Of a stretch of 64,000 nt of DNA, positions 1 to 60,375 are shown piece after piece. Position numbers and translations under genes: made by a program. This DNA is from Ylistrum balloti (Eukaryota). The notes under the pieces were generated by a model. The model had not been told where the DNA came from. It made no database searches and saw nothing but the letters and a program-made list of their open reading frames with translations. The stretch lies in contig NW_026782457.1 of the NCBI RefSeq assembly GCF_031769215.1, forward strand, positions 62,001 through 126,000, in the 5' to 3' direction. The first letter of the stretch is position 1. Each line of letters opens with the position of its first letter.

Positions 1-573
1 CTTTTGTAAAATCTTTATCACTGGTTTCAATGCATGTCCACCTGTAAAAACATTACACACGTGTATGTATTTGTAGGTGTGTTTTTCATTGATATGAGAC
101 ACTTTTCAGGTAAACCTGTATATATGTATATATGTAGGTAGACAGCTACAATATTTCAGTATGTCAATTTTAATGTAAGAAGATAAAGTTTCCTATAACA
201 CTTTGAAAGTATACACCACATCTGGTCATCACTTTACAATAGAAGGGGCCAGAATTTAATCATTTCTATGTCTAACCTTCTTGTAAGCTATCATATCAAT
301 TTGGATTTCTGCTGTAAATTTAGAGTAGATAAAATGCACTGAATGTCATGATTCATAAACAAAATTAGAAAGCTTAAGAAGTAAGCAAATGTTTTGATTA
401 AAACCTAAAAGATTTCTCATACCCTTAAAATAATTGATAATCTGTACATCTTCTCATATGCATAATGCCTTTTTCCTATATATGTGTCATTTAAAATCTT
501 TTCTATAATCAGGTTCAAATCTTAATTTTCTGATGGCTATGAGATCTGTTGAAACAGCTACTTTAAATTGGTG

Positions 574-15091
<14,518 letters not shown>

Positions 15092-38400: not shown

Positions 38401-41400
38401 CAAAACATTTGATCTCACATAAATCGAATCCTCTGATAACTTGAAGTTTTCCAACTTCGAAATAATGAAGTTTGACTGTAGCTTGTTTATATGACATGAA
38501 GCCCTGAGATAAGCATTACTGTAGTGCATTGCTTTGTATAAAGACAAATAATGGATAACCCGTAGCGCTCAGAACGTCTATTGTCATTCATAATTTCAAA
38601 TCAATGATAAATATACATGGATACCTGAAGACTTGGATTTTTTTTCTATTAATTCGTTGTTTAAATGCTTTGTCATGATGCAAAAAGTCAGTATCCTTAA
38701 AGTGAAGCAGTTCTGTGAAGTATTTCGGATTGTCTGTTCCGATGTCATGTCAATGTTTATTAGAACAAAACTCGCTTAAGTGGTCCCACGTGATTTCTCG
38801 CAATATAGCCATATACAATTGTACAATCATTCGACTCATAAGATTTTCTGTTTTTACGATTTATCAATTTGCAGTTGTATAACATCAATCATTAGCTTCA
38901 CATTTGTTATTTTGGCAGGTTAACTCCACACTAAAGACATTGATTCTTTCAATGAATGGCCTTGGAAATTCTGGGTGCCAGGTCATGATGGAGGGTCTAC
39001 GTGGAAACGAGGCTCTAACTACCCTTGACCTTAGTGCAAATCGAATCACCGATGCCGCTGTGGATTACATCATTAGAGTGCTTCCTTACCACAAATCTCT
39101 CACGTCACTCAAGGTACATTACAGGATTTTAATTGATGTCACAAAACTTAATCTTTCTTTTAAAATATATAATTTTTTTCTTATTTTATGTCATTTGGTT
39201 GGTAGAAACGTTACTGAACTGTCAGTATACATTCAATGCATTTAGCAATCAGCATTAATGACTTAATTGTAGCTATGTACCAACTAATGACATTTTTTTT
39301 AGTTCTCAAAATTTATCATTTTTATACCGTTGTTATGGTATTTATCTTAACAATACAAAAACGAGTATCGGAGTATTAGATAAACGACATTTTGTTTTTA
39401 TAAGAATATATTTCTGCTAATCTTTGTGATCTTTGGATATGAAACCAATTGCTATCTTTTTAGTTATCTCACAATCAACTGTCTGCTGAGGGAGCATTTA
39501 AGATACTCAAACCGTTGACCTCCAAGTTCAGGAAAAAACTCAGCTACCTTGAGTTGGATGTAAGTATATCTAAACATTCTTCTGGTCGTATGGAATATTT
39601 AATGTTAATCGTTACATCTTCGGTTTAAGTAATAGTATCCCGCACACTCTACAACTCCAAATCCAAGTGTTTATTTAAATATTACTATAAATGTGAATTT
39701 CCATTTCTAGATACGATTTTTTTAATTCTAATGAATATTCGTATTATATACTTCTAAAGGGAACGGATGTGAACTCTGACCTAATGGAAGTCATAGAAAA
39801 TTTGAACGCGAGGCGAGGATTGGTTATTTCTATCAAGCGGCCTCCATCTCGTCGATCTAAAACCCTGGATCAGTTGACTCGAGTATTGTCAGCAATATGT
39901 AGATTTTTGATAAAGGAAGGTCTTGATATCAAAACAGTGTTTCCAGATCTGGAGAAGGAAAGGGAGGAGAGTTATACCACTTACGATATTATAGAGATAA
40001 TACGGGTAAGCTTACACACAGACTCTTTCAAAACACAAAACCAACGAGTTTAAGTTAATGTTTCATAGAAGGGCAGCAGTGAGTATTGGTAGAATTTTTT
40101 TGTGTTGACAAAGAAAAACTAGCATTACGATATCCCATGCTGTGTTCTTATGACAAAGAAATATTACATGGATTTGTCATATATTCCCGACCGACAGTCC
40201 ATATCTATGTATCATAGTAACAATAATAAATACAAATGGACTGTGGATCGGGAATTTGAACAAATCCCTTTGAGAAATATTGACCGGGGGTGATATTGCA
40301 GCGTGATGACGCTAGTTTTTTTTACCCGGCCACTGCTCACGAAATTCTCCTTAACTTAAAATTGCCAATAAAAAGCATTACAAAATTTATTAACTTTGAG
40401 TTTTTCTTTAATTTAAGTAATGTTTTTACAGTAGTTAAGCTTTCCCTAAATTAAGGAAGATTCGTGAAACGGGCCTGTGTGTTGAATCTGCGTTATATTT
40501 GACCTCTTTACATTCACGCACAGGCATCTTCATCACCATGTCTTAGAGTCATAAAATGTTTTACAAGTTGTGTTGTTGTTTTGATAGTCTACATAAAAAT
40601 TTACTTAAATCTGATTTCATCCACTTTTTTTTATTTCATATTGGATTACATTTTGTACTCCCACTTTTATGCATCAATAGAACTGTGGAGAGGAATTCAA
40701 TCGGACACAGGTGACAGAGCTGAGAAAAATTTGCAAGGAGTTACGCCATAGAACTTTGCTGTTGAAGTATGTATATATTATCCCGTTTTGCACTGTACGT
40801 GTATGAAATTGGTTACATTTATCTACGAATTGTCTTTAGTCATCTGTAAGTTCATCCTCAATACTCCCGAGGTTACACTTACTATGGCTCTCTGCACTCC
40901 GGAGCATTTCATGGCCAAATTGCAGACACAGGCGAAGTAATTTGATTGGTCTGTAGCGGGTTTCAGGGAAACAAAGTGACCAATCACAGGCTAAAAGGCT
41001 TCTTTGAAGAATACAAAGGAGCGACACCCAATTTAAAAGCCAGTGCGTGACAGATAGCGCAAAAAATCGAAACCCGTGGAGTATCCACGATATTCTAACT
41101 TTAAACAAATGGAAATACTTTTAAAATCTATTCGGTGAAAGGGTGTAATATCATTTCCTCCATTATATCGAAAAAGCTGTTGTACATAAATATATGGAAT
41201 TACAACTCAGAGGTATAGATGTATCATATTTGTAAAACTGAAATGCTTCTAATTGCTATTGTATGTAAGACCGTAATATCATCACCTAGATTTTAAAGTG
41301 TTACAATGAAGTATATATCTCGTAGCGTGAAATAAAGCCTGCGAGTGTTTCACTGCGTTCATAGTACCATAAACACATGAAAATCGTAGTTCAATCTTCA

Positions 41401-43575: not shown

Positions 43576-44108
43576 TTTTTTTTCAATTTTAGTAAAAGTA
43601 AACCATATTATGTATTTCATAATTTTAGCCATGCCATGAAACTATAAACAATATAACACATACATGTAATGCGTATGGAATGGGAAAGCAGGGTTAAATC
43701 TCATATTGATTAATTGTCTAAAGATCTTTTTCTGCATTTGTAAACTAATTGGTTTTTATGTCATTAACCACTAAATTACACATGTAATCATAATTGTGCA
43801 AATAATGTTGAATATAAAAAAAATGTTCATTCTTAAATTTCATAGCTAGATTTCCTTTTGTTGCAAAAATGCAAGCTGCGGACAAGTGGCCATCTTGAAA
43901 TCTGACCAATCAACTCAACTGTTATTTTTTCAATAAAGTACTCGAGAGGTCATTTTTGAATTTCGTATGTCGGTTTTTTTTTCAGTTTTATCTGTCAACA
44001 CAACAAATAGTGCAGCAAAATACGACGAAGAAATATAATAATATAGATACGTTAGAGCACGACCAACCGAGCTTAATACAAGAATGTCTGTCATAGCGGG
44101 CAGTAATG

Positions 44109-44689
44109 ACAAGAGGCCCAAAGGGCCTGTATCGCTCACCTGGTTTAGTTCGCTGAAATTACTTCATCTAAACTAAATGAAAAAAACATTTAAAAGATTT
44201 ATATTCGTTTCATGTATAAGGTATCCCTATCCTGTCCTTTGAGAATCAGATGCATCAAATATACAGAATAAAGTTCCCTTCAATCATGGGTGCTTCAGAC
44301 AAAGCTAGGACGAAATTCAATCATTCCTAATGAATGAGAACTGAACAGTTTTATAAAATTGATTTCCTTTCACATACCTAGGATGATTCAGACCAAATAG
44401 GGTCAGAATTTAAATATTCCTACATTGAAATTAGATTTTAAAGGTTTTGCTTTATTTCTACTATTTGACCCCACTTCTCTGGTCCGAGGGGGGGGGGGGG
44501 CGGTGGGGGTCAGACCCACTGTTTCTGAGCACTGATTTTCCTTCACCCAATGATGTTCAAGACAAAATTATTGAAATCCGCCCAGTTGTTCACGACTTGT
44601 AGTAATTTCTAGCAAAAGTTTTCGAACGGACGGACGACGCGATATGCCATATGCTCATTTGGCCCCACGGGGTAGGTAAGCTGATAAAA
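44109..44689 (+). mobile_element. HINE/Helentron-type non-autonomous element
   Basis: 5' ACAAGAGGCCCAAAGGGCC hairpin plus ATCGCTCACCTG, central ~150-bp satellite-like units (CTTCAGACCAAA), a (GGAC)n microsatellite, and 3' GCTCA...GG.CCC..GGG.AGGT.AGCT-AAAA. Confidence 0.75.
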
Positions 44690-45570
44690 CAGGAGACATA
44701 ATGGTAATGTGTCATAAAACTCGGCTAACTTTGAGTCACCTCGTCTTCAGCTGCCTGTGGTGAAACGTGCAATGCAATCCTACTCGTAACTCAACCGAAA
44801 GACATGTCTAGTTGACCCAGACTCCTCCTGAAAAGACGTCTCGGATGACACATGTAATGTTTACGTAACGTCAGCGGGAGACTTTTCCAACGTTGACCCC
44901 GACTCGTCTTCAACTGATGCCTCTAGTGACACTTGTAATACGTCATCGCGAGATTCACCAAAAGTCGATCTCAAATTGCCTTCAGACGTCTATGTTGACA
45001 CAAGCAATGGGCAGTCTCATCACTTTTAGAAACGTTTATCCTGATGCGTGTGCCTGTGTTGATAAATGTTATGCCACACATATGATTCGATTTAAGACGA
45101 GTTTGGTGACACTAGAAAAGAACACTTGTAAGTGTATTACACGAAGCATCGTCGCAAGACACGTCTAAAGTTGACCCTGACCTGTCATCGGAAGTTTCTG
45201 TTGACCTTGACTTGATAAGCCCGGTATCGAACCCATTGCCTTGTGTTGTGCTTGGACGTTTCAGCAAAACAGATAAATACAAATCCAAAACGGTAGAAGA
45301 ATCCGTATTCAAATTAATCAGCTTTTCTAAATGAATACCATGCATCGATGTTGATGGAAGAGGCCTATCGAAAGACAGATTTTGAACTTTCTTTTTCTGG
45401 GAGATATCTTGAATCTGCGGTGTGGGATTCTGTGAAGTCTTATCCTGAAAAGTTGGTGTCGTTGTAATATCACTGAAAAAATAGAACATAATCATAGAAG
45501 ATTGTAACAAAAATTATGTAATAATTTATTGTATTAAGTTAATGGTTAAATCAAAGATATATATATTTTT

Positions 45571-46197
45571 TTACATCAATTGCGAAACAAGTTGTACCAA
45601 CTTAACTGAATTGTCCCGCGAATGATAGGGCCTCGCTGTACCAGGAAACCAGAATACCCGGGGGAAACTTTTGCCAGCGGCCTTAACCGCGTAAAAAATA
45701 AGCACCGACATAGAGAAAATGTGACGAAAATAATTCTTGTAATATGCAAATATGGGCGTGTTGGATTTGTTAGAACTGTAACACACGAGATACCTCGATA
45801 AAGCCAACCTGAGACGTGAATTCAGTAGCTCCTCTTCAATCCTCCAGTAGCTACCTCCTGCATCACCTCTTCTTAACTTCACAGACGTGCCTTCGTTTTT
45901 TGTTGTGAATTTCTTATGATGAAATCTTTTAGATACTTTAACTGGAACTTGCGTACATTTTCCGTACCTTTCTAGCTGTTTGAAAATCCATAGTCTGCGA
46001 TTGTCAAAACTATACCACTGTCCATCCTTTTTACAAACTGTTATCTTCGGAATCTTTTCGATTGTAGCAGTTTCCATTAAAACTTCGTCGAGTGTTATTC
46101 CAATTTCTGAATTTTTATGCCTAGTATTTTGACGAAATACATTACTTATAGTTTCCTGCGTGTAACGTATTTCACTTGGTTTCAGATACATGCCCAT
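45571..46197 (-). CDS. Uncharacterised protein with N-terminal ParB/sulfiredoxin-like domain (possibly spliced to 45112-45472)
   Basis: 208-aa ORF beginning MGMYLKPSEIRYTQETISNVF...IPKITV...GQWYSFDNRRLWIFKQL. TATATAA at 46243-46237 lies ~45 nt upstream, and the ATG has G at +4. The fold call is from motif recognition only. Confidence 0.7.
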   Translation of the reverse strand: MGMYLKPSEIRYTQETISNVFRQNTRHKNSEIGITLDEVLMETATIEKIPKITVCKKDGQWYSFDNRRLWIFKQLERYGKCTQVPVKVSKRFHHKKFTTKNEGTSVKLRRGDAGGSYWRIEEELLNSRLRLALSRYLVCYSSNKSNTPIFAYYKNYFRHIFSMSVLIFYAVKAAGKSFPRVFWFPGTARPYHSRDNSVKLVQLVSQLM

Positions 46198-47049
46198 GAT
46201 GAAATGTTATGTGGTATCAACTATGATTACGGTGAGTTATATACAATCCTTTTATCTTGTATGGGGTTCCACGTACGCACGATAAAGATTTTTTGCAACT
46301 TCACTGAAAATGAAAGTGAAACTAATATTGCGTATTAAGGGAGGTAACTATGCCAACCTAAAGCAAACGGATTGCAAAATTACTTACTCAGTACATTAAT
46401 TAGTATTGTTTCTTAAACTGGTTTTTTTTTTTTTTTTTTTTTCATTATTCCCTTAAATTCGAAAATGTGTCATTCAATATGGCAGATCAGATTTATTGTT
46501 TTTAACATATCGATCATCACAAACCTTGTTTCCTCGAATGAGGTCATTCCAGATAAAATGCTTATGCCCAGCCTCTAGATTTTGAAAATCCTCACACGCT
46601 GCTTTCAGTTTCACAAAGTTTACTTATCGAAGATTTGTGTGTATTAAAGGTAAAGTCCATGCAAGGTAAACGTATTTATTTTACATAAAACTACTGTGAT
46701 GGATTTTCTTGAAAAAGAAACCAGTAATAGGACAAAAGTTGCGGAAAACATGAAGATTTTTGTTGGTTTTATCGTGGATATATGAAACTTTTGATAAAGT
46801 TAATTTATGTTTCATAAGATTTTTGAATAATTTGAATGTGTTACCAGGAAAGTTGTGTTTTGTGGTAAGACTTACAGCCTCATAGAACTTTCTAGTTTCC
46901 ATCTGCCTACTTTTCATACCCGTTACATATAAATCTTCGTTGGAAGCTGTCAATGTATAATGATATGAAATCATATTTAATCAAAGGATAAAACCACAAA
47001 ATAGATTGGATTACCATACAATGAAAATATATGTACATATAGTAGAAAT

Positions 47050-49130
47050 AATAAGGCAATGTTCATCATGTCCCAAGGGGCCTAAACCCACTGTTCAAGC
47101 AAAATCTGTTCCACTTCACCCTAGGATGCTTCAGACCAAATTATGACACAATCCTGCCATTCCTACCGGTAGTTTTAAAGAATTTCCTCTGTTTTACCTA
47201 TTAACCCCGACCCTCTGGCCCCAGGAGGCCAGGCCAAGACCCACCATTTACACAAAATTGTTTCCCTTCACCCTAGGATGTTTTAGACCAAATAGCCACA
47301 GAATCCTGTCATTCATACATGTTTTTAAAGAATTTGCGAAATTTCCCCCTTTTGGCCCTGCCCCTCCTGCCTTAGGACCCTAGACCTCCATGTATTGTTT
47401 ACACAAGATTGATACCATTTCACAAAAAAATTATTCTGCTTCACCAAAGAATACTTCAGACAAAATTCAGGAAATATCCATTCATTTTTAAAGGAGGAGT
47501 ATAATTATAAACAAGAGTTCCTCGGAACTGTATGTGTCACCTGCATAACGTGTCACGGTCACCCAGAAATTGAACTGGATGTGCAACGATCAACCATAAA
47601 GTTGTAATACCAAATTTCATTTCTATAACTTAAAGCATAAAGGGAAAACTGCGCAAAGCAATATTCCTGAGAAATTTTCCAAGTTCAAAGGGAAATATCA
47701 CTGCCAAAAAGGGTTACAGACTGCCAAGAAGCAAACTTGGTGCGTAACTTTTGACCAAGAACTCATATACAAAATTGCATTTTCATAACTCGAAGCATTA
47801 CCAAGAAAATTCCAGGAAACAATATTCCCAAAGAATTGGAGTTCCAATGGGTCAGGAAGAGTCTCAGAGAGCTGAGAATTGAACTTGATCTGTAATCTTC
47901 CACCAAGAAGCCATATACAACATTTCATTATGTTAACTCCAAGCATAATTGGGAAATATCTGGAAAACAATATTCCCAGGAAATTTTCTAGGTTGAAAGA
48001 GGCATAACTCTGCCAAAAAGGGTAACAGAAAGCCGGGAATCGAACTTAATCTGTACCCTTGCAACAACAAGCCATATGCCAAATTTCATTTCTATAACTC
48101 AAAGCATAAGCCAAAAATGTCCAGAAAACAATTTTCCCAGGAAATTTCTAAGTTGAAAGGGGCATAACTCTGCCAAAAAGGGTCACAGACAGCCGAGAAT
48201 CAAACTTTATCTGTACCCTTGCAACAAAAAGCCATATGCCAACTTTCATTTTGATAACTCAAATCATTACCGAAAAACTAGAAAATGTCTGTAAGACATG
48301 AATGCCGCCCCCCCCCCCCCCACCCCCCATGTGAAATAATAGTGAAAGGTCCGAAAGAGATGATTTTGTTAATTTGTATGCAACTATGTACAACTTAAGT
48401 TTCATACTTAAATTGACAAGTTGATTTAACATACATGAATTTGGAATTTTGTTCTCTGGAAAAAATGAGGGAGTATATTAGTTCCTTATGCCTTAAAACC
48501 CACAAGTACCAAATTATGTAGAAATAAGATGATGTTCCTCTTTTTTGAGTTATCTCCCCCTGGTGGCCATCTTTTTTTAGAATGCCGAGAAATTCAACAC
48601 TGCATGAGGTCTTTCCATACTTGATATTTGTATGAAGTTTCATGAAAATTGCCTTCCGAATGAAGTTGTTAGGTGGTATATACTGATTTGGGACGTGACG
48701 CGACGGGACGGGACGCGACAGGACGGGACGGACGGACATGGGCAACGCTATATGCCCCCGGCCATAAATGGCGGGGGCATAAAAAACCAGAAAACTTTAG
48801 TATGGACGACGCCGACGCACGACGATGGACAAAGTGATCCTCAAGTGTCCGCCAGCTCTGCAGGCGACACAATAATTTACTCTATTTCCCCTATTGGGCC
48901 CTGCCACTCCCTTCTCAGAAGGCCGAGACCCACTATTTATACAAAACTTCACCCAATAATGCTTCAGACCAAATTTGGAAAATTCAATCATTCCTACTGG
49001 AGGAATAGGATTTTAAATAATTTGCTCTATTGCCCCTCCTGCTCCAGTTTGTTTATTATTTACAAATGTCACTTTAAATATCTTCAGCAGGGAATGAGAA
49101 AATCTCACTGTGTTCATTTTGAAAAGAAAA
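47050..49130 (+). mobile_element. Three nested HINE/Helentron-type elements with ~150-bp internal tandem arrays
   Basis: Outer ~47050-47508 + 48876-49130 (CTTCACCC.AGGATGCTTCAGACCAAA units). Middle 47509-48875 (AACAAGAG start, ~5 x ~150-bp units, GTGTC.GCC...GGCGACAC end). Inner ~48276-48786 ((GGAC) microsatellite, ATGCCCCCGGCCAT-AA-ATGGCGGGGGCAT hairpin, AAAAAA). Confidence 0.75.
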
Positions 49131-52050: not shown

Positions 52051-52545
52051 CTATAACTGACCACAATTACTAATAATAACTTTTTTTGATGTTGCTCCAC
52101 TTTGTGATCCGACCGCTTCTACTTTCTTCACAACATCCATCCCCTCTGTAACAGATCCAAACACCACGTGCTTTCCATCCAGCCAAGACGTTTTCGCAGT
52201 GCACAAAAAGAACTGAGATCCGTTGGTGTTCGGACCGGCATTAGCCATCGACAAAATTCCAGGGCCAGTATGTTTCAGCTGGAAGTTTTCGTCGGCAAAC
52301 TTTTCTCCGTAGATACTTTTTCCTCCGGTCCCATTCCCACGAGTGAAATCTCCGCCTTGGCACATGAAGTCGGGGATAACACGATGAAACGACGAGCCCT
52401 TGAATCCAAAGCCTTTCTCGCCAGTACAAAGCGCTCGAAAGTTTTCAGTTGTTTTGGGAACAACATCTCCTCTTAACTCCATGACAATTCTCCCAGCAGC
52501 TGAACCACCAATATCTATGTCGAAAAATACATTCTGCTTTGACAT
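52051..52545 (-). CDS. PPIA: Cyclophilin A-type peptidyl-prolyl cis-trans isomerase, intronless CDS
   Basis: 164 aa with [39 protein letters not shown] and [10 protein letters not shown]. Catalytic and cyclosporin-binding residues (R55, F60, Q63, F113, W121, H126 equivalents) are intact. Kozak context CACCATG. AATAAA at ~51723-51728. Confidence 0.97.
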
Positions 52546-58988: not shown

Positions 58989-59457
58989 AAGTTCCCTTAC
59001 AAGAACCCACAATTCTGCGAGGGACCAACATATCGTTGCCTCCAATGGACATGCAGTGGAATGCAGCATATCCTACTTTTTATGTCTTCGGTTCATCTTT
59101 AACAGTAAGCATCGGAAAAAATCAACCCCGACCTGCAAGTAGCGTCAAACCATTAGTTACCTCTTCCGAATCTCAGCGAGAGGCAGCAGGCAGTCTTCTC
59201 TCGTCACCTGTGTGGGTTTTAAATGTCGAATGCACATTATACCATTGGTATTTTCATTATTGATTATTTGATATGCGTGTTCACGTTTATAACTGTATTA
59301 ACTGCAATATGAACTTTAAATGTGTTATTATTTGAGAGAAATTTTTTTTACATCGTAGCTTTATGCAACCTTTCCGTCATTCCTAGGTACAGAGGTACAT
59401 AAGTTGGTGGATGTTGGCGTGATTCATAAAATAAAAAAAAAATTAACAATGGTGTTC

Positions 59458-60375
59458 ACGTGTGAAAAGACATTTGGAAACTGAAGGAGGGCTCGACTGT
59501 GTGAAAAGACATTGGGAAACTGAAGGAGGGTTCGACTGTGTGAAAAGACATTGGGAAACTGAAGGAGGGTTCGACTGTGTGAAAAGACATTTGGAAACTG
59601 AAGGAGGGGTCGACTGTGTATAAAGACATTGGGGAACTGAAGGAGGGTTCGACTGTGTGAAAAGACATTGGGAAACTGAAGGAGGGTTCGACTGTGTGAA
59701 AAGACATTGGGAAACTGAAGGAGGGGTCGACTGTGTATAAAGACATTGGGGAACTGAAGGAGGGTTCGACTGTGTGAAAAGACATTGGAAAACTGAAGGA
59801 GGGTTCTACTGTGTGAAAAGACATTAGGAAACTGAAGGAGGGGTCGACTGTGTATAAAGACATTGGGGAACCGAAGGAGGGTTCGACTGTGTGAAAAGAC
59901 ATTGGGAAACTGAAGGAGGGTTCGACTGTGTGAAAAGACATTGAGAAACTGAAGGAGGGGTCGACTGTGTATAAAGACATTGGTTAACTGGAGGAGGGGT
60001 CGACTGTGTATAAAGACATTGGGGAACTGGAGGATGGATCGACTGTGTGAAAAAAACATTGGGGAACTGGAGGAGGTTCGACTGTGTGAAAAAAACATTG
60101 GGAAACCGAAGGAGGTGACAACTGTGTGAAAAGACATTGGGAAACTGAAGGGGGGTTCGACTGTGAAAAGACAATGGGAAACTGAAAGAGGGGTCGACTG
60201 TGAAAAGACATTGGGTAACCGACGGAGGGGTCGACTGTGTGAAAAGACATTGGGGAACTGAAGAGAGATTGACTTTGTGAAAAACATTGGGAAACCGAAG
60301 AAATGGTCGACTGTGAAAAGATATTGGGTAACTGAAGGAGGGGTCGACTGTGAAAAGACATTGGGGATCTGAAGG
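59458..60375. repeat. 39-bp tandem repeat (~23 copies) with 117-bp higher-order structure
   Basis: Unit ACTGTGTGAAAAGACATTGGGAAACTGAAGGAGGGTTCG. Variants alternate A, A', B. Confidence 0.97.

What the first reader, a model, noticed from the sequence alone, without database searches (positions are those of the whole stretch)
45571..46197. Animal gene with a ParB/sulfiredoxin-like DNRRL domain: candidate toxin-derived enzyme or immune effector
Seen: a compact ~115-aa N-terminal domain (LKPSEIRYTQETIS...IPKITV...WYSFDNRRLWIFKQL), a TATA box, and a variable tail with a short hydrophobic stretch. Known: the ParB/Srx fold uses a GxxRxxA-type Arg motif to bind nucleotides (ParB CTPase, sulfiredoxin, SerK and SbnI kinases), and ParB-like domains occur as bacterial polymorphic toxin tips. 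Inference: the IRF/YSQ..I + DNRRL pattern resembles that toxin-like branch rather than eukaryotic sulfiredoxin, so this may be an uncharacterised nucleotide-consuming enzyme family in invertebrates, perhaps horizontally acquired and defence-related.
Basis: partly seen in the sequence, partly recalled or inferred. Interest (0 to 1): 0.85.

Follow-up and report, generated by a model that had tools for sequence, protein, structure and literature searches.

The report
Scallop gene with bacterial-toxin ParB-like domain
This is a real two-exon scallop gene whose first 115 residues are the "Tox-ParBL1" domain, a ParB/sulfiredoxin-like module otherwise found at the killing tip of bacterial polymorphic toxins; its presence in animals was published in 2012, and its biochemical activity has still not been measured.

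Summary
The ORF, the ~115-residue N-terminal domain and the TATA box are real. The 208-aa ORF is not the protein, though. The gene has two exons (46197-45809 and 45472-45112, minus strand) and encodes 249 aa. Its intron sits at the same codon and phase as in the Mizuhopecten orthologue.

Two AlphaFold models (pLDDT 74 and 88.6) match only ParB/Srx-fold structures. HMMER and hhalign find no significant link to canonical ParB or sulfiredoxin. The domain does have clear sequence homologues at the extreme C-terminus of bacterial Rhs, eCIS-type and ALF-repeat toxins and in orphan cassettes. Each is followed by a small putative immunity gene, often DUF7660. The same polar residues are kept in bacteria and animals (Q14, D65-N66-R67-R68, K96, G103).

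This matches the Tox-ParBL1 family of Zhang et al. 2012, who already reported it in metazoans as an acquisition separate from sulfiredoxin.

The family is large (2637 clusters at 50% identity; about 10 copies in this genome). The gene is under purifying selection (dN/dS about 0.17). Nucleotide use, a defence role and transcription remain untested.

The parts
46226..46278 (-). Conserved proximal promoter block containing the TATA box (TATATAA at 46243-46237)
   Evidence: Alignment with the region upstream of the Mizuhopecten orthologue: this block is conserved while the DNA further upstream is not. Sequence read directly.
45809..46197 (-). Exon 1 coding part: ATG at 46197, 129 codons plus 2 bases, donor CTCAG|GTTGGC
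   Evidence: ORF. The Mizuhopecten gene (L084) has its exon 1 end after the same 129 codons + AG, followed by GTATGT. dN/dS 0.17 against the orthologue.
45850..46191 (-). Tox-ParBL1 (ParB/Srx-like) domain, residues 3-116
   Evidence: Profile envelope. AlphaFold model pLDDT 88.6. Only ParB/Srx folds match it. Toxin-tip clusters match in the ESM Atlas.
46156..46161 (-). T13-Q14 of the conserved N-terminal [ST]-Q-x-[ST]-I motif
   Evidence: Q14 is kept in 91% of eukaryotic and 100% of bacterial rows, and S/T16 in 83% and 80%. Zhang et al. 2012 list a conserved N-terminal [ST].
45994..46005 (-). D65-N66-R67-R68, the predicted phosphate-binding motif (counterpart of ParB GERR and ToxB GNHR)
   Evidence: DNRRL occurs in 145 motif matches in the 150 best representatives. 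Each residue is kept in 93-100% of both bacterial and eukaryotic rows. It sits at the strand 60-63 to helix 66-77 junction of the model. hhalign places DNRR on GERR, but that alignment is not significant.
45473..45808 (-). Intron, 336 nt, GT..AG, phase 2.
   Evidence: A second individual's DNA contig carries a 1-nt deletion at 45565 inside it, with no effect on the exons.
45112..45472 (-). Exon 2 coding part: acceptor ttttttcag|T, 119 codons, stop TAG at 45114-45112. S/T/D-rich tail with a conserved VLDLYLSVLLK patch.
   Evidence: BLASTP to the orthologue's tail, E 2e-9. The acceptor is in the same place as in L084. Composition.

Best explanation
A functional, intron-containing scallop gene encodes a 249-residue cytosolic protein. 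It has an N-terminal Tox-ParBL1 domain followed by a disordered S/T/D-rich tail. The domain is a divergent ParB/sulfiredoxin-fold module. Its bacterial homologues are the C-terminal toxic tips of polymorphic toxins and are neutralised by a downstream immunity gene. The animal copies descend from an old transfer. They have since expanded, especially in bivalves, usually as 'N-terminal domain + disordered linker + variable C-terminus'. The C-terminus is often a membrane anchor. Inferred mechanism: the domain binds a nucleoside triphosphate with the D-N-R-R turn, which is the counterpart of the GxxR P-motif of ParB, sulfiredoxin, SerK and ToxB. It then hydrolyses the nucleotide or transfers its phosphate to a substrate not yet known. 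Shown here: the gene structure, purifying selection, the predicted fold, homology with toxin tips and retention of the polar residues. Inferred: NTP binding or hydrolysis, and any role in immunity.
For: Gene reality: the intron position and phase are identical to the Mizuhopecten orthologue. Exon 2 is homologous to the orthologue's tail. The TATA block is conserved. dN/dS is 0.17 over exon 1. A second individual keeps both exons open. Fold: all of the top 50 Foldseek PDB hits and the top 10 of 48,161 chains by VIA-align are ParB/Srx members, with best Z 7.7 (Atu1540) and 6.7 (Arabidopsis Srx), and the first unrelated chain at Z 2.8. The named hits among the top 50 viral matches are likewise ParB/Srx-type. 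Toxin kinship by sequence: a Thermomicrobiales cassette (E 6e-10), 74 metagenome loci and six plasmid records. The domain lies at the extreme C-terminus of Rhs/YD proteins (L010, L012, L020), an eCIS_core protein (L018) and an ALF-repeat protein (L017). A DUF7660 gene (E 1e-23 to 1e-27) or a 138-aa gene follows it. A Bacillus toyonensis plasmid carries it as an orphan cassette behind an RHS core gene. Toxin kinship by structure: PT-HINT, RHS, PT-VENN and MafB clusters at TM 0.69-0.77. Residues P7, Q14, S/T16, F21, D65-W70, F72, K96 and G103 are conserved in both bacteria and eukaryotes. Literature: the Tox-ParBL1 definition fits. The related classical ParB-fold toxin ToxB is an ATPase that depends on the GxxR arginine.
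Against: No nucleotide binding or catalysis has been measured for any ParBL1 member, as far as I could find. Sequence profiles give no significant link to canonical ParB (hhalign probability 0.2-0.3%) or to any PDB or Pfam ParB/Srx entry. The fold assignment therefore rests on predicted structures with moderate Z scores. The glycine of GxxR is replaced by aspartate. No RNA run holding the gene was listed, so transcription is unproven. Six of seven coding differences between two alleles are non-synonymous. That fits relaxed or diversifying selection within the species. The bacterial rows were retrieved with a DNRRLW pattern, which inflates apparent motif conservation on that side.
Confidence: 0.6

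Rival explanations
1. The domain is a nuclease acting on DNA or RNA rather than an NTPase or phosphotransferase, as Zhang et al. 2012 suggested for ParB-type toxin tips.
For: Most polymorphic-toxin tips are nucleases, and the 2012 paper argues that ParB-fold phosphotransfer chemistry could cleave phosphodiesters. Osa, a ParB-fold protein, also appears among the structural hits.
Against: The only ParB-fold toxin tested so far in the papers I found (ToxB) lacks DNA binding and acts as an ATPase. The nearest solved folds are nucleotide-binding enzymes and switches. No metal-binding acidic cluster stands out among the shared conserved residues.
Confidence: 0.2
2. The animal copies have lost catalysis and serve as binding or scaffold modules, for example a nucleotide sensor or a protein-protein adaptor tethered to membranes.
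For: Domesticated toxin domains often become non-catalytic. Many paralogues are membrane-tethered (34 TM tails and 20 CaaX-like ends in 150). No immunity-gene homologue was found in the scallop genome, which would be easier to tolerate if the protein were harmless.
Against: The polar residues conserved in the bacterial toxins (Q14, D65, N66, R67, R68, K96) are kept at 91-99% in 181 eukaryotic rows. dN/dS is 0.17. That pattern is what one expects of an active site.
Confidence: 0.12
3. It is a decaying pseudogene, or bacterial contamination of the assembly.
For: No RNA evidence was obtained. Allelic differences are mostly non-synonymous. One family copy in this genome is broken by four stops.
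Against: It has a spliceosomal intron shared with another scallop genus. Its GC content is about 0.35-0.40, like the surrounding animal DNA. The promoter block is conserved. The exons are open in two individuals. dN/dS is 0.17 at dS about 1.
Confidence: 0.04
4. It is a relative of the phage anti-Thoeris protein Tad6 (the only Pfam hit) and blocks TIR-domain enzymes.
For: Pfam PF25188 Tad6, E 0.03-0.07, 13.7-14.7 bits over 42-47 residues.
Against: The hit is below the 27-bit cut-off and seen in only 1 of 55 family members. Tad6 acts by inserting a loop into ThsB, which bears no relation to the conserved DNRR site.
Confidence: 0.02

Closest known systems
Tox-ParBL1 (Zhang, de Souza, Anantharaman, Iyer & Aravind 2012, Biol Direct 7:18; archetype Neisseria gonorrhoeae NGK_2271, a MafB toxin)
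   Same: Predicted ParB fold. Conserved N-terminal S/T and an N-R-R motif. C-terminal tips of RHS, HINT, MafB and filamentous toxins. Reported in metazoa and other eukaryotes as an acquisition separate from sulfiredoxin. All of these features were recovered here independently.
   Different: The paper lists Imm-SUKH and Imm44 as immunity partners, whereas I find DUF7660 and an unnamed 138-aa family. The bivalve expansion, the membrane anchors and the HSP70-12 fusion are not described in the parts I read. I could not compare directly with NGK_2271. Neither Pfam nor NCBIfam matched the domain.
ToxB, the CdiA-CT ParB-fold ATPase toxin (Kaljevic et al., bioRxiv 10.64898/2026.05.05.722872)
   Same: A ParB/Srx-fold domain at the tip of a polymorphic toxin, neutralised by a downstream immunity protein. 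Its phosphate-binding motif is G-N-H-R, against D-N-R-R here. It is toxic in plant cells as well.
   Different: ToxB belongs to the PF02195-positive 'classical' ParB toxin clade, is rare, and is concentrated in Enterobacterales. The family here does not hit PF02195 and is a separate, much larger clade with eukaryotic members.
Sulfiredoxin (Srx)
   Same: A single-domain eukaryotic ParB-fold protein of ~100 residues and among the best structural matches (Arabidopsis Srx Z 6.7-6.8, Foldseek E 7e-4). The strand-turn-helix carrying the motif matches (YSFGGCHR against YSFDNRRL).
   Different: There is no catalytic cysteine and no PF02195 hit. There is an extra C-terminal K-x-T-T..G element. The evolutionary origin is separate.
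ParB/Noc/KorB CTPase switches
   Same: The fold matches, and the R-R of box II (GERR) lines up with R67-R68.
   Different: There is no HTH DNA-binding or dimerisation domain, no box I/III conservation, and no significant profile match.
SerK / SbnI kinases and Atu1540 (PDB 2hwj)
   Same: Structural matches at Z 5.7-7.7 over 72-93 residues. These are ATP-using ParB-fold enzymes that work on small substrates.
   Different: They carry a second C-terminal domain. Sequence identity is only 10-17%.

Membership tests
Tox-ParBL1 | ParB/Srx-type alpha+beta fold | tested here: met
   Two AlphaFold models (pLDDT 74 and 88.6). All top PDB hits are ParB/Srx-fold proteins, as are the named viral hits. These are predicted structures only, with Z at most 7.7.
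Tox-ParBL1 | Conserved N-terminal Ser/Thr | tested here: met
   The window protein has T13 and T16. Position 16 is S in 83% of eukaryotic and 80% of bacterial rows. I cannot tell which of the two is the serine of Zhang et al. without their alignment.
Tox-ParBL1 | [NT][RT][RT] motif, mostly N-R-R | tested here: met
   N66-R67-R68. DNRRL occurs in 145 motif matches in the 150 best representatives, and each residue is kept in 96-100% of rows.
Tox-ParBL1 | Homologues are C-terminal tips of polymorphic toxins (RHS, HINT, MafB, filamentous) with an immunity gene downstream | tested here: met
   Sequence homologues lie at the end of Rhs, eCIS and ALF proteins. Immunity-like genes follow them. An orphan cassette sits in a B. 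toyonensis RHS locus. Structural neighbours carry PT-HINT, RHS, PT-VENN or MafB domains.
Tox-ParBL1 | Direct sequence or profile match to the archetype NGK_2271 | not tested
   The archetype sequence was not on hand and the paper's alignment file is not held. The only link is a structural match to a MafB-domain cluster, TM 0.69.
Sulfiredoxin | Catalytic Cys in the F-G/S-G-C-H-R motif, and a Pfam PF02195 match | tested here: not met
   The motif reads F-D-N-R-R-L, with no Cys. There is no PF02195 hit at E<=10, nor in any of 55 members at E<=1.
Canonical ParB CTPase | Box I/II/III CTP motifs plus an HTH DNA-binding domain; PF02195 or TIGR00180 match | tested here: not met
   No Pfam hit. hhalign against five ParB N-domains gives probability 0.2-0.3%. 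The protein has no HTH region.
ToxB / classical Tox-ParB | PF02195-positive ParB domain with a G-N-H-R (DGHHR-type) motif at a CdiA or RHS tip | tested here: not met
   There is no PF02195 hit, and the motif is D-N-R-R. It is related at fold level only.
Tad6 (PF25188) | Score above the Pfam gathering cut-off (27 bits) | tested here: not met
   13.7-14.7 bits, in 1 of 55 family members.

The most novel reading that the evidence does not exclude
Bivalves and other invertebrates have turned a bacterial toxin warhead into a family of cytosolic, often membrane-tethered, NTP-consuming effectors. These would act in innate immunity, for example by local nucleotide depletion or by target phosphorylation at infected membranes. 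The HSP70-12 fusion and the high non-synonymous polymorphism would then be signs of an arms race.
Probability: 0.15. Interest if true: 0.8.

Novelty: new member of a known kind. Interest (0 to 1): 0.4.

Why it matters
ParBL1 is one of the bacterial toxin domains taken up by eukaryotes. It forms a large animal family: 2637 clusters at 50% identity, about 10 copies in this scallop, and representatives in many bivalves, an annelid and cnidarians. Neither Pfam nor NCBIfam matched the domain. I found no reported biochemical activity and no known biological role in any eukaryote. A recent preprint shows that a sister ParB-fold toxin is an ATPase, which gives a concrete assay to try. This gene itself is an ordinary member of the family. 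The value of the check lies in three things: a corrected gene model, a link to the 2012 family definition, and some new context (DUF7660 as a likely immunity partner, and frequent C-terminal membrane anchors).

Tried and rejected
1. Pfam, NCBIfam and PDB sequence searches, with the single protein and with a 55-sequence profile, found no ParB/Srx family. There were only sub-threshold chance hits such as Tad6, an NLR and HUWE1.
2. hhalign of the family profile (55 and 196 sequences) against five Chloroflexota ParB N-domains was not significant (probability 0.2-0.3%). Only the register of the low-stringency alignment was informative.
3. RNA evidence: no RNA run was listed. The one run that holds the locus (X1) is DNA of another individual, and its contig spans the intron. 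Transcription and splicing are therefore untested.
4. The viral-contig scan found no relative.
5. Immunity-gene homologues (DUF7660, and the 138-aa family) were not found in the scallop genome. This is a weak negative because the controls did not ring.
6. PF02195 was not found in the scallop genome by six-frame search. Its sulfiredoxin gene is probably split by introns, so no own-genome Srx comparison was made.
7. The ESM Atlas 'named clusters' search gave no usable hit.
8. A Pfam scan of nine multi-domain eukaryotic members gave only a sub-threshold C2H2 finger (22.8 bits, cut-off 27) and nothing related to immunity. One search failed on a coordinate slip of mine.
9. A literature search for LOC110444971 and for DUF7660 found no papers.
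10. The supplement of Zhang et al. does not hold the ParBL1 alignment.

Full report
OBSERVATION

The surrounding DNA has a GC content of 0.32-0.41 and is eukaryotic in character. The window is contig C600:62001-126000 of a 648-Mb genome. Its closest protein match is from the scallop Mizuhopecten yessoensis: LOC110444971, 322 aa, 72% identity over residues 1-118.

GENE MODEL

Similarity to the orthologue runs to about residue 129 and then stops. It resumes in a separate minus-strand ORF, where residues encoded by 45115-45471 match the orthologue's tail (BLASTP E 2e-9, 41% identity).

The sequence offers a donor CTCAG|GTTGGC after 45809 and an acceptor ttttttcag|T before 45472. These define a 336-nt GT..AG intron in phase 2. 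In the Mizuhopecten locus (L084) the annotated protein is encoded by exactly 129 codons + AG | GTATGT ... TTTCAG | T GAT. That is the same codon and phase.

The protein is therefore 249 aa: 129 codons, one split Ser codon and 119 codons.

The real tail is 29% Ser+Thr and rich in Asp. It has neither a transmembrane segment nor a CaaX box. It keeps one short patch in common with the orthologue (VLDLYLSVLLK against VLDLYFSIMLK).

The N-terminus starts directly with the domain, so there is no signal peptide.

A TATATAA lies at 46243-46237 inside a ~50-nt block that is conserved with the Mizuhopecten upstream region, while DNA further upstream has diverged.

IS THE GENE ALIVE?

Nei-Gojobori dN/dS against the orthologue over exon 1 is 0.17. 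With dS about 1 this is rough, but it clearly indicates purifying selection.

A contig from a second individual (run X1) covers 44109-46411 with 14 substitutions. It has no indel in either exon. Of its seven coding differences, six are non-synonymous. The sample is small, but the within-species pattern looks relaxed or diversifying.

X1 is a DNA run, because its contig spans the intron. No RNA run was listed. Transcription therefore remains unproven.

FAMILY SIZE AND RANGE

A 7-sequence profile finds 2637 cluster representatives at E<=1e-3 among 1.84 billion. Of these, 840 reach E<=1e-10 and 163 reach E<=1e-30.

The named members I looked up are all 'uncharacterized' or 'hypothetical' proteins. 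They come from bivalves (Argopecten, Pecten, Mizuhopecten, Mytilus, Mya, Mactra, Pinctada, Saccostrea, Tegillarca, Dreissena, Potamilus, Sinanodonta) and from the annelid Dimorphilus. Atlas clusters add Cnidaria. Low-GC metagenome contigs add other, unidentified eukaryotes.

This genome has 10 family places. Nine are open and one carries four stops.

The usual architecture is an N-terminal domain followed by a low-complexity tail. Among the 150 best representatives, a crude hydropathy test finds 34 that end in a tail-anchor-like hydrophobic segment, and 20 end in a CaaX-like box such as CCVIL or CCIIL. Some proteins carry two or three domain copies. One Mactra protein is fused to an HSP70-12A ATPase.

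FOLD

The first AlphaFold model (7 sequences, pLDDT 74) and the second (55 sequences, pLDDT 88.6, pTM 0.83) share one topology.

Foldseek against the PDB returns only ParB/Srx proteins in its top 50. These include Noc (E 3.5e-4), Arabidopsis sulfiredoxin (7e-4), ParB with CTP or CDP, KorB, SbnI, SerK, Atu1540 and PadC.

VIA-align against 48,161 representative chains puts ten ParB/Srx entries first. The best are Z 7.7 over 93 residues for Atu1540, 6.7 for Srx and 6.4 for SerK. The first unrelated chain scores Z 2.8.

Among the top 50 BFVD viral hits, every hit that carries a name is a ParB/Srx-type protein.

These Z values are moderate, but the specificity is striking.

At sequence level there is no significant link. 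Pfam, NCBIfam and PDB searches are blank. hhalign against canonical ParB domains gives a probability of 0.2-0.3%. The weak Tad6 hit occurs in 1 of 55 members and is chance.

The D65-N66-R67-R68 motif lies at the junction of strand 60-63 and helix 66-77. That is where ParB has G-E-R-R and sulfiredoxin has G-C-H-R. The low-stringency hhalign register puts DNRR on GERR. This is an inference, not a significant result.

BACTERIAL KIN ARE TOXIN TIPS

A motif-seeded scan of species genomes found a Thermomicrobiales MAG with a 101-aa ORF that aligns over the whole domain (E 6e-10). A DUF7660 gene overlaps its end (E 1.6e-23), and a second cassette follows.

The metagenome scan gave 74 loci. In the high-GC, gene-dense ones the domain sits at the extreme C-terminus of several toxin types:
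- L020: an open frame of more than 2100 residues that runs off the contig end, with ten RHS repeats.
- L012: a 987-aa RHS protein.
- L010: a protein with the Rhs core end motif.
- L018: an eCIS_core (PF13699) protein.
- L017: an ALF-repeat protein.

In each case a small ORF follows within 0-40 nt. It is either DUF7660 (E 1e-23 to 1e-27) or a conserved 138-aa family with no Pfam match.

tblastn against plasmids found copies in Sinorhizobium, Streptomyces, Haliovirga and Bacillus toyonensis. In B. toyonensis p246 the domain is an unannotated orphan cassette. It lies behind an RHS core gene and is followed by DUF7660 and then by an AHH nuclease cassette.

Occurrence is sporadic: 5 of 301 Chloroflexota and 5 of 401 Pseudomonadota species genomes sampled.

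With the better model, the ESM Atlas search returns bacterial clusters carrying PT-HINT (TM 0.77), RHS (0.74-0.75), PT-VENN (0.70) and MafB (0.69) domains.

Across 15 bacterial and 181 eukaryotic rows the shared conserved residues are P7, Q14, S/T16, I17, F21, I52, D65-N66-R67-R68-L69-W70, F72, K96 and G103. The window protein has all of them. One caveat applies: the bacterial metagenome loci were retrieved with a DNRRLW pattern.

PHYLOGENY

The tree is a quick maximum-likelihood build of 83 rows over 113 columns. The 15 bacterial rows fall on one side of a branch (SH-aLRT 86) and all eukaryotic rows on the other. The window gene is sister to the Mizuhopecten gene (support 99).

The tree is unrooted and poorly resolved, and the bacterial sampling is biased. 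It does argue against a recent transfer into scallops. It is compatible with one or a few old transfers.

WHAT IS KNOWN

Zhang et al. 2012 (PMC3482391) defined Tox-ParBL1 as follows. It has a predicted ParB fold (HHpred 93% to Thermus ParB) and the motifs [ST] and [NT][RT][RT], the latter 'mostly R'. It is found on RHS, filamentous-haemagglutinin, HINT and MafB toxins. [quoted passage not shown]

Every feature I could test fits that definition. Only a direct comparison with the archetype NGK_2271 could not be done.

I found no experimental work on ParBL1. The nearest tested relative is ToxB, a classical, PF02195-positive ParB-fold CdiA tip. It binds and slowly hydrolyses ATP through its G-N-H-R motif, loses ATP binding and detectable ATP hydrolysis with R108A, is blocked by its immunity protein, and is toxic in plant cells (bioRxiv 10.64898/2026.05.05.722872).

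MECHANISM

Shown: an expressible-looking gene under selection, the predicted fold, homology with toxin tips, and retention of the polar core.

Inferred from the behaviour of ParB, Srx, SerK, SbnI and ToxB: the D-N-R-R turn binds the phosphates of an NTP, and the protein hydrolyses it or transfers a phosphate. I put this at roughly even odds. A nuclease activity (about 0.2) or a non-catalytic binding role (about 0.1) are the alternatives.

The absence of a signal peptide, together with the frequent C-terminal membrane anchors in paralogues, places the domain on the cytosolic face of membranes. A defence role is possible but has no direct support here.

VERDICT

The ORF's tail is an intron, however, and the family, including its presence in animals, has been in the literature since 2012. 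I file it as a new member of a known kind and score its interest as moderate. The family is large, no Pfam or NCBIfam model matched it, it has not been characterised biochemically, and it is now directly testable.

Noticed in passing
L009:6246-6557; L010:1246-1503; L011:692-946; L012:5776-6030; L013:3655-3924; L014:1285-1605; L017:4585-4848; L110:4342-4596: A DUF7660 (PF24693, 'unknown function') gene sits directly after the ParBL1 toxin cassette. This holds in a Thermomicrobiales MAG, six metagenome toxin loci and a Bacillus toyonensis plasmid. It is probably the cognate immunity protein. No paper in the library mentions DUF7660. Pfam matches were run on four of the eight (L009, L010, L012, L110); the other four are assigned by visible sequence similarity.
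   Followed up: partly
L015:454-867; L016:2395-2814; L018:4404-4820; L020:6315-6725; L023:894-1313; L025:599-1021: A second conserved ~138-aa ORF family follows the other branch of ParBL1 toxins (eCIS-type and one Rhs). The two members scanned (L016, L020) have no Pfam match. It is a likely alternative immunity family.
   Followed up: partly
P0001-P0150 (best representatives of the family): 34 of 150 end in a tail-anchor-like hydrophobic segment and 20 of 150 end in a CaaX-like box with extra cysteines (e.g. CCVIL, CCIIL). About a third of the family is therefore predicted to be tethered to membranes by the C-terminus. The window gene has neither feature.
   Followed up: partly
P0069 (Mactra antiquata KAL4220205.1): An N-terminal ParBL1 domain is fused to an HSP70-12A-type ATPase (Pfam HSP70 E 4.9e-13).
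   Followed up: no
window 45329, 45397, 45838, 45942, 46019, 46054, 46071: Between the assembly and a second individual (run X1), six of seven coding differences are non-synonymous (T43S, K48N, Q60R and V86F in the domain; Q>H and L>S in the tail). Long-term dN/dS is 0.17.
   Followed up: partly
G000:C321:226518-226733: A family copy broken by 3 TGA and 1 TAG lies 6.5 kb from an intact tail-anchored paralogue (C321:233032-233370). Two further intact copies lie 15 kb apart on C322.
   Followed up: no
window 44266-44425 and 47102-47491: Arrays of a ~65-nt repeat unit (spacing 93-173 nt) flank the gene on both sides. Stretches beside them (44028-44255 and 47106-47200) reach word depths of 260-3100 in run X1, so an abundant dispersed repeat lies here.
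   Followed up: no
window 52051-52545 (-): An uninterrupted 164-aa ORF that looks like cyclophilin A (peptidyl-prolyl isomerase), judged from the sequence alone. It lies 6 kb from the ParBL1 gene.
   Followed up: no
window 38904-39245 (+): An ORF fragment with RNI-type leucine-rich repeats (LSMNGLGNSG..LDLSANRITD). It is probably an exon of an LRR protein.
   Followed up: no
window 59424-60361 (-): Long ORFs in several frames, made of a tandem ~13-residue repeat (FPNVFSHSRTLLQ-like). This is a tandem DNA repeat, not evidently a gene. GC skew also rises sharply from 58 kb to 64 kb.
   Followed up: no
L009:6007-6312 and L009:6729-7355: Two successive ParBL1 cassettes lie on one Thermomicrobiales contig, an orphan-cassette array typical of polymorphic toxin loci.
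   Followed up: no
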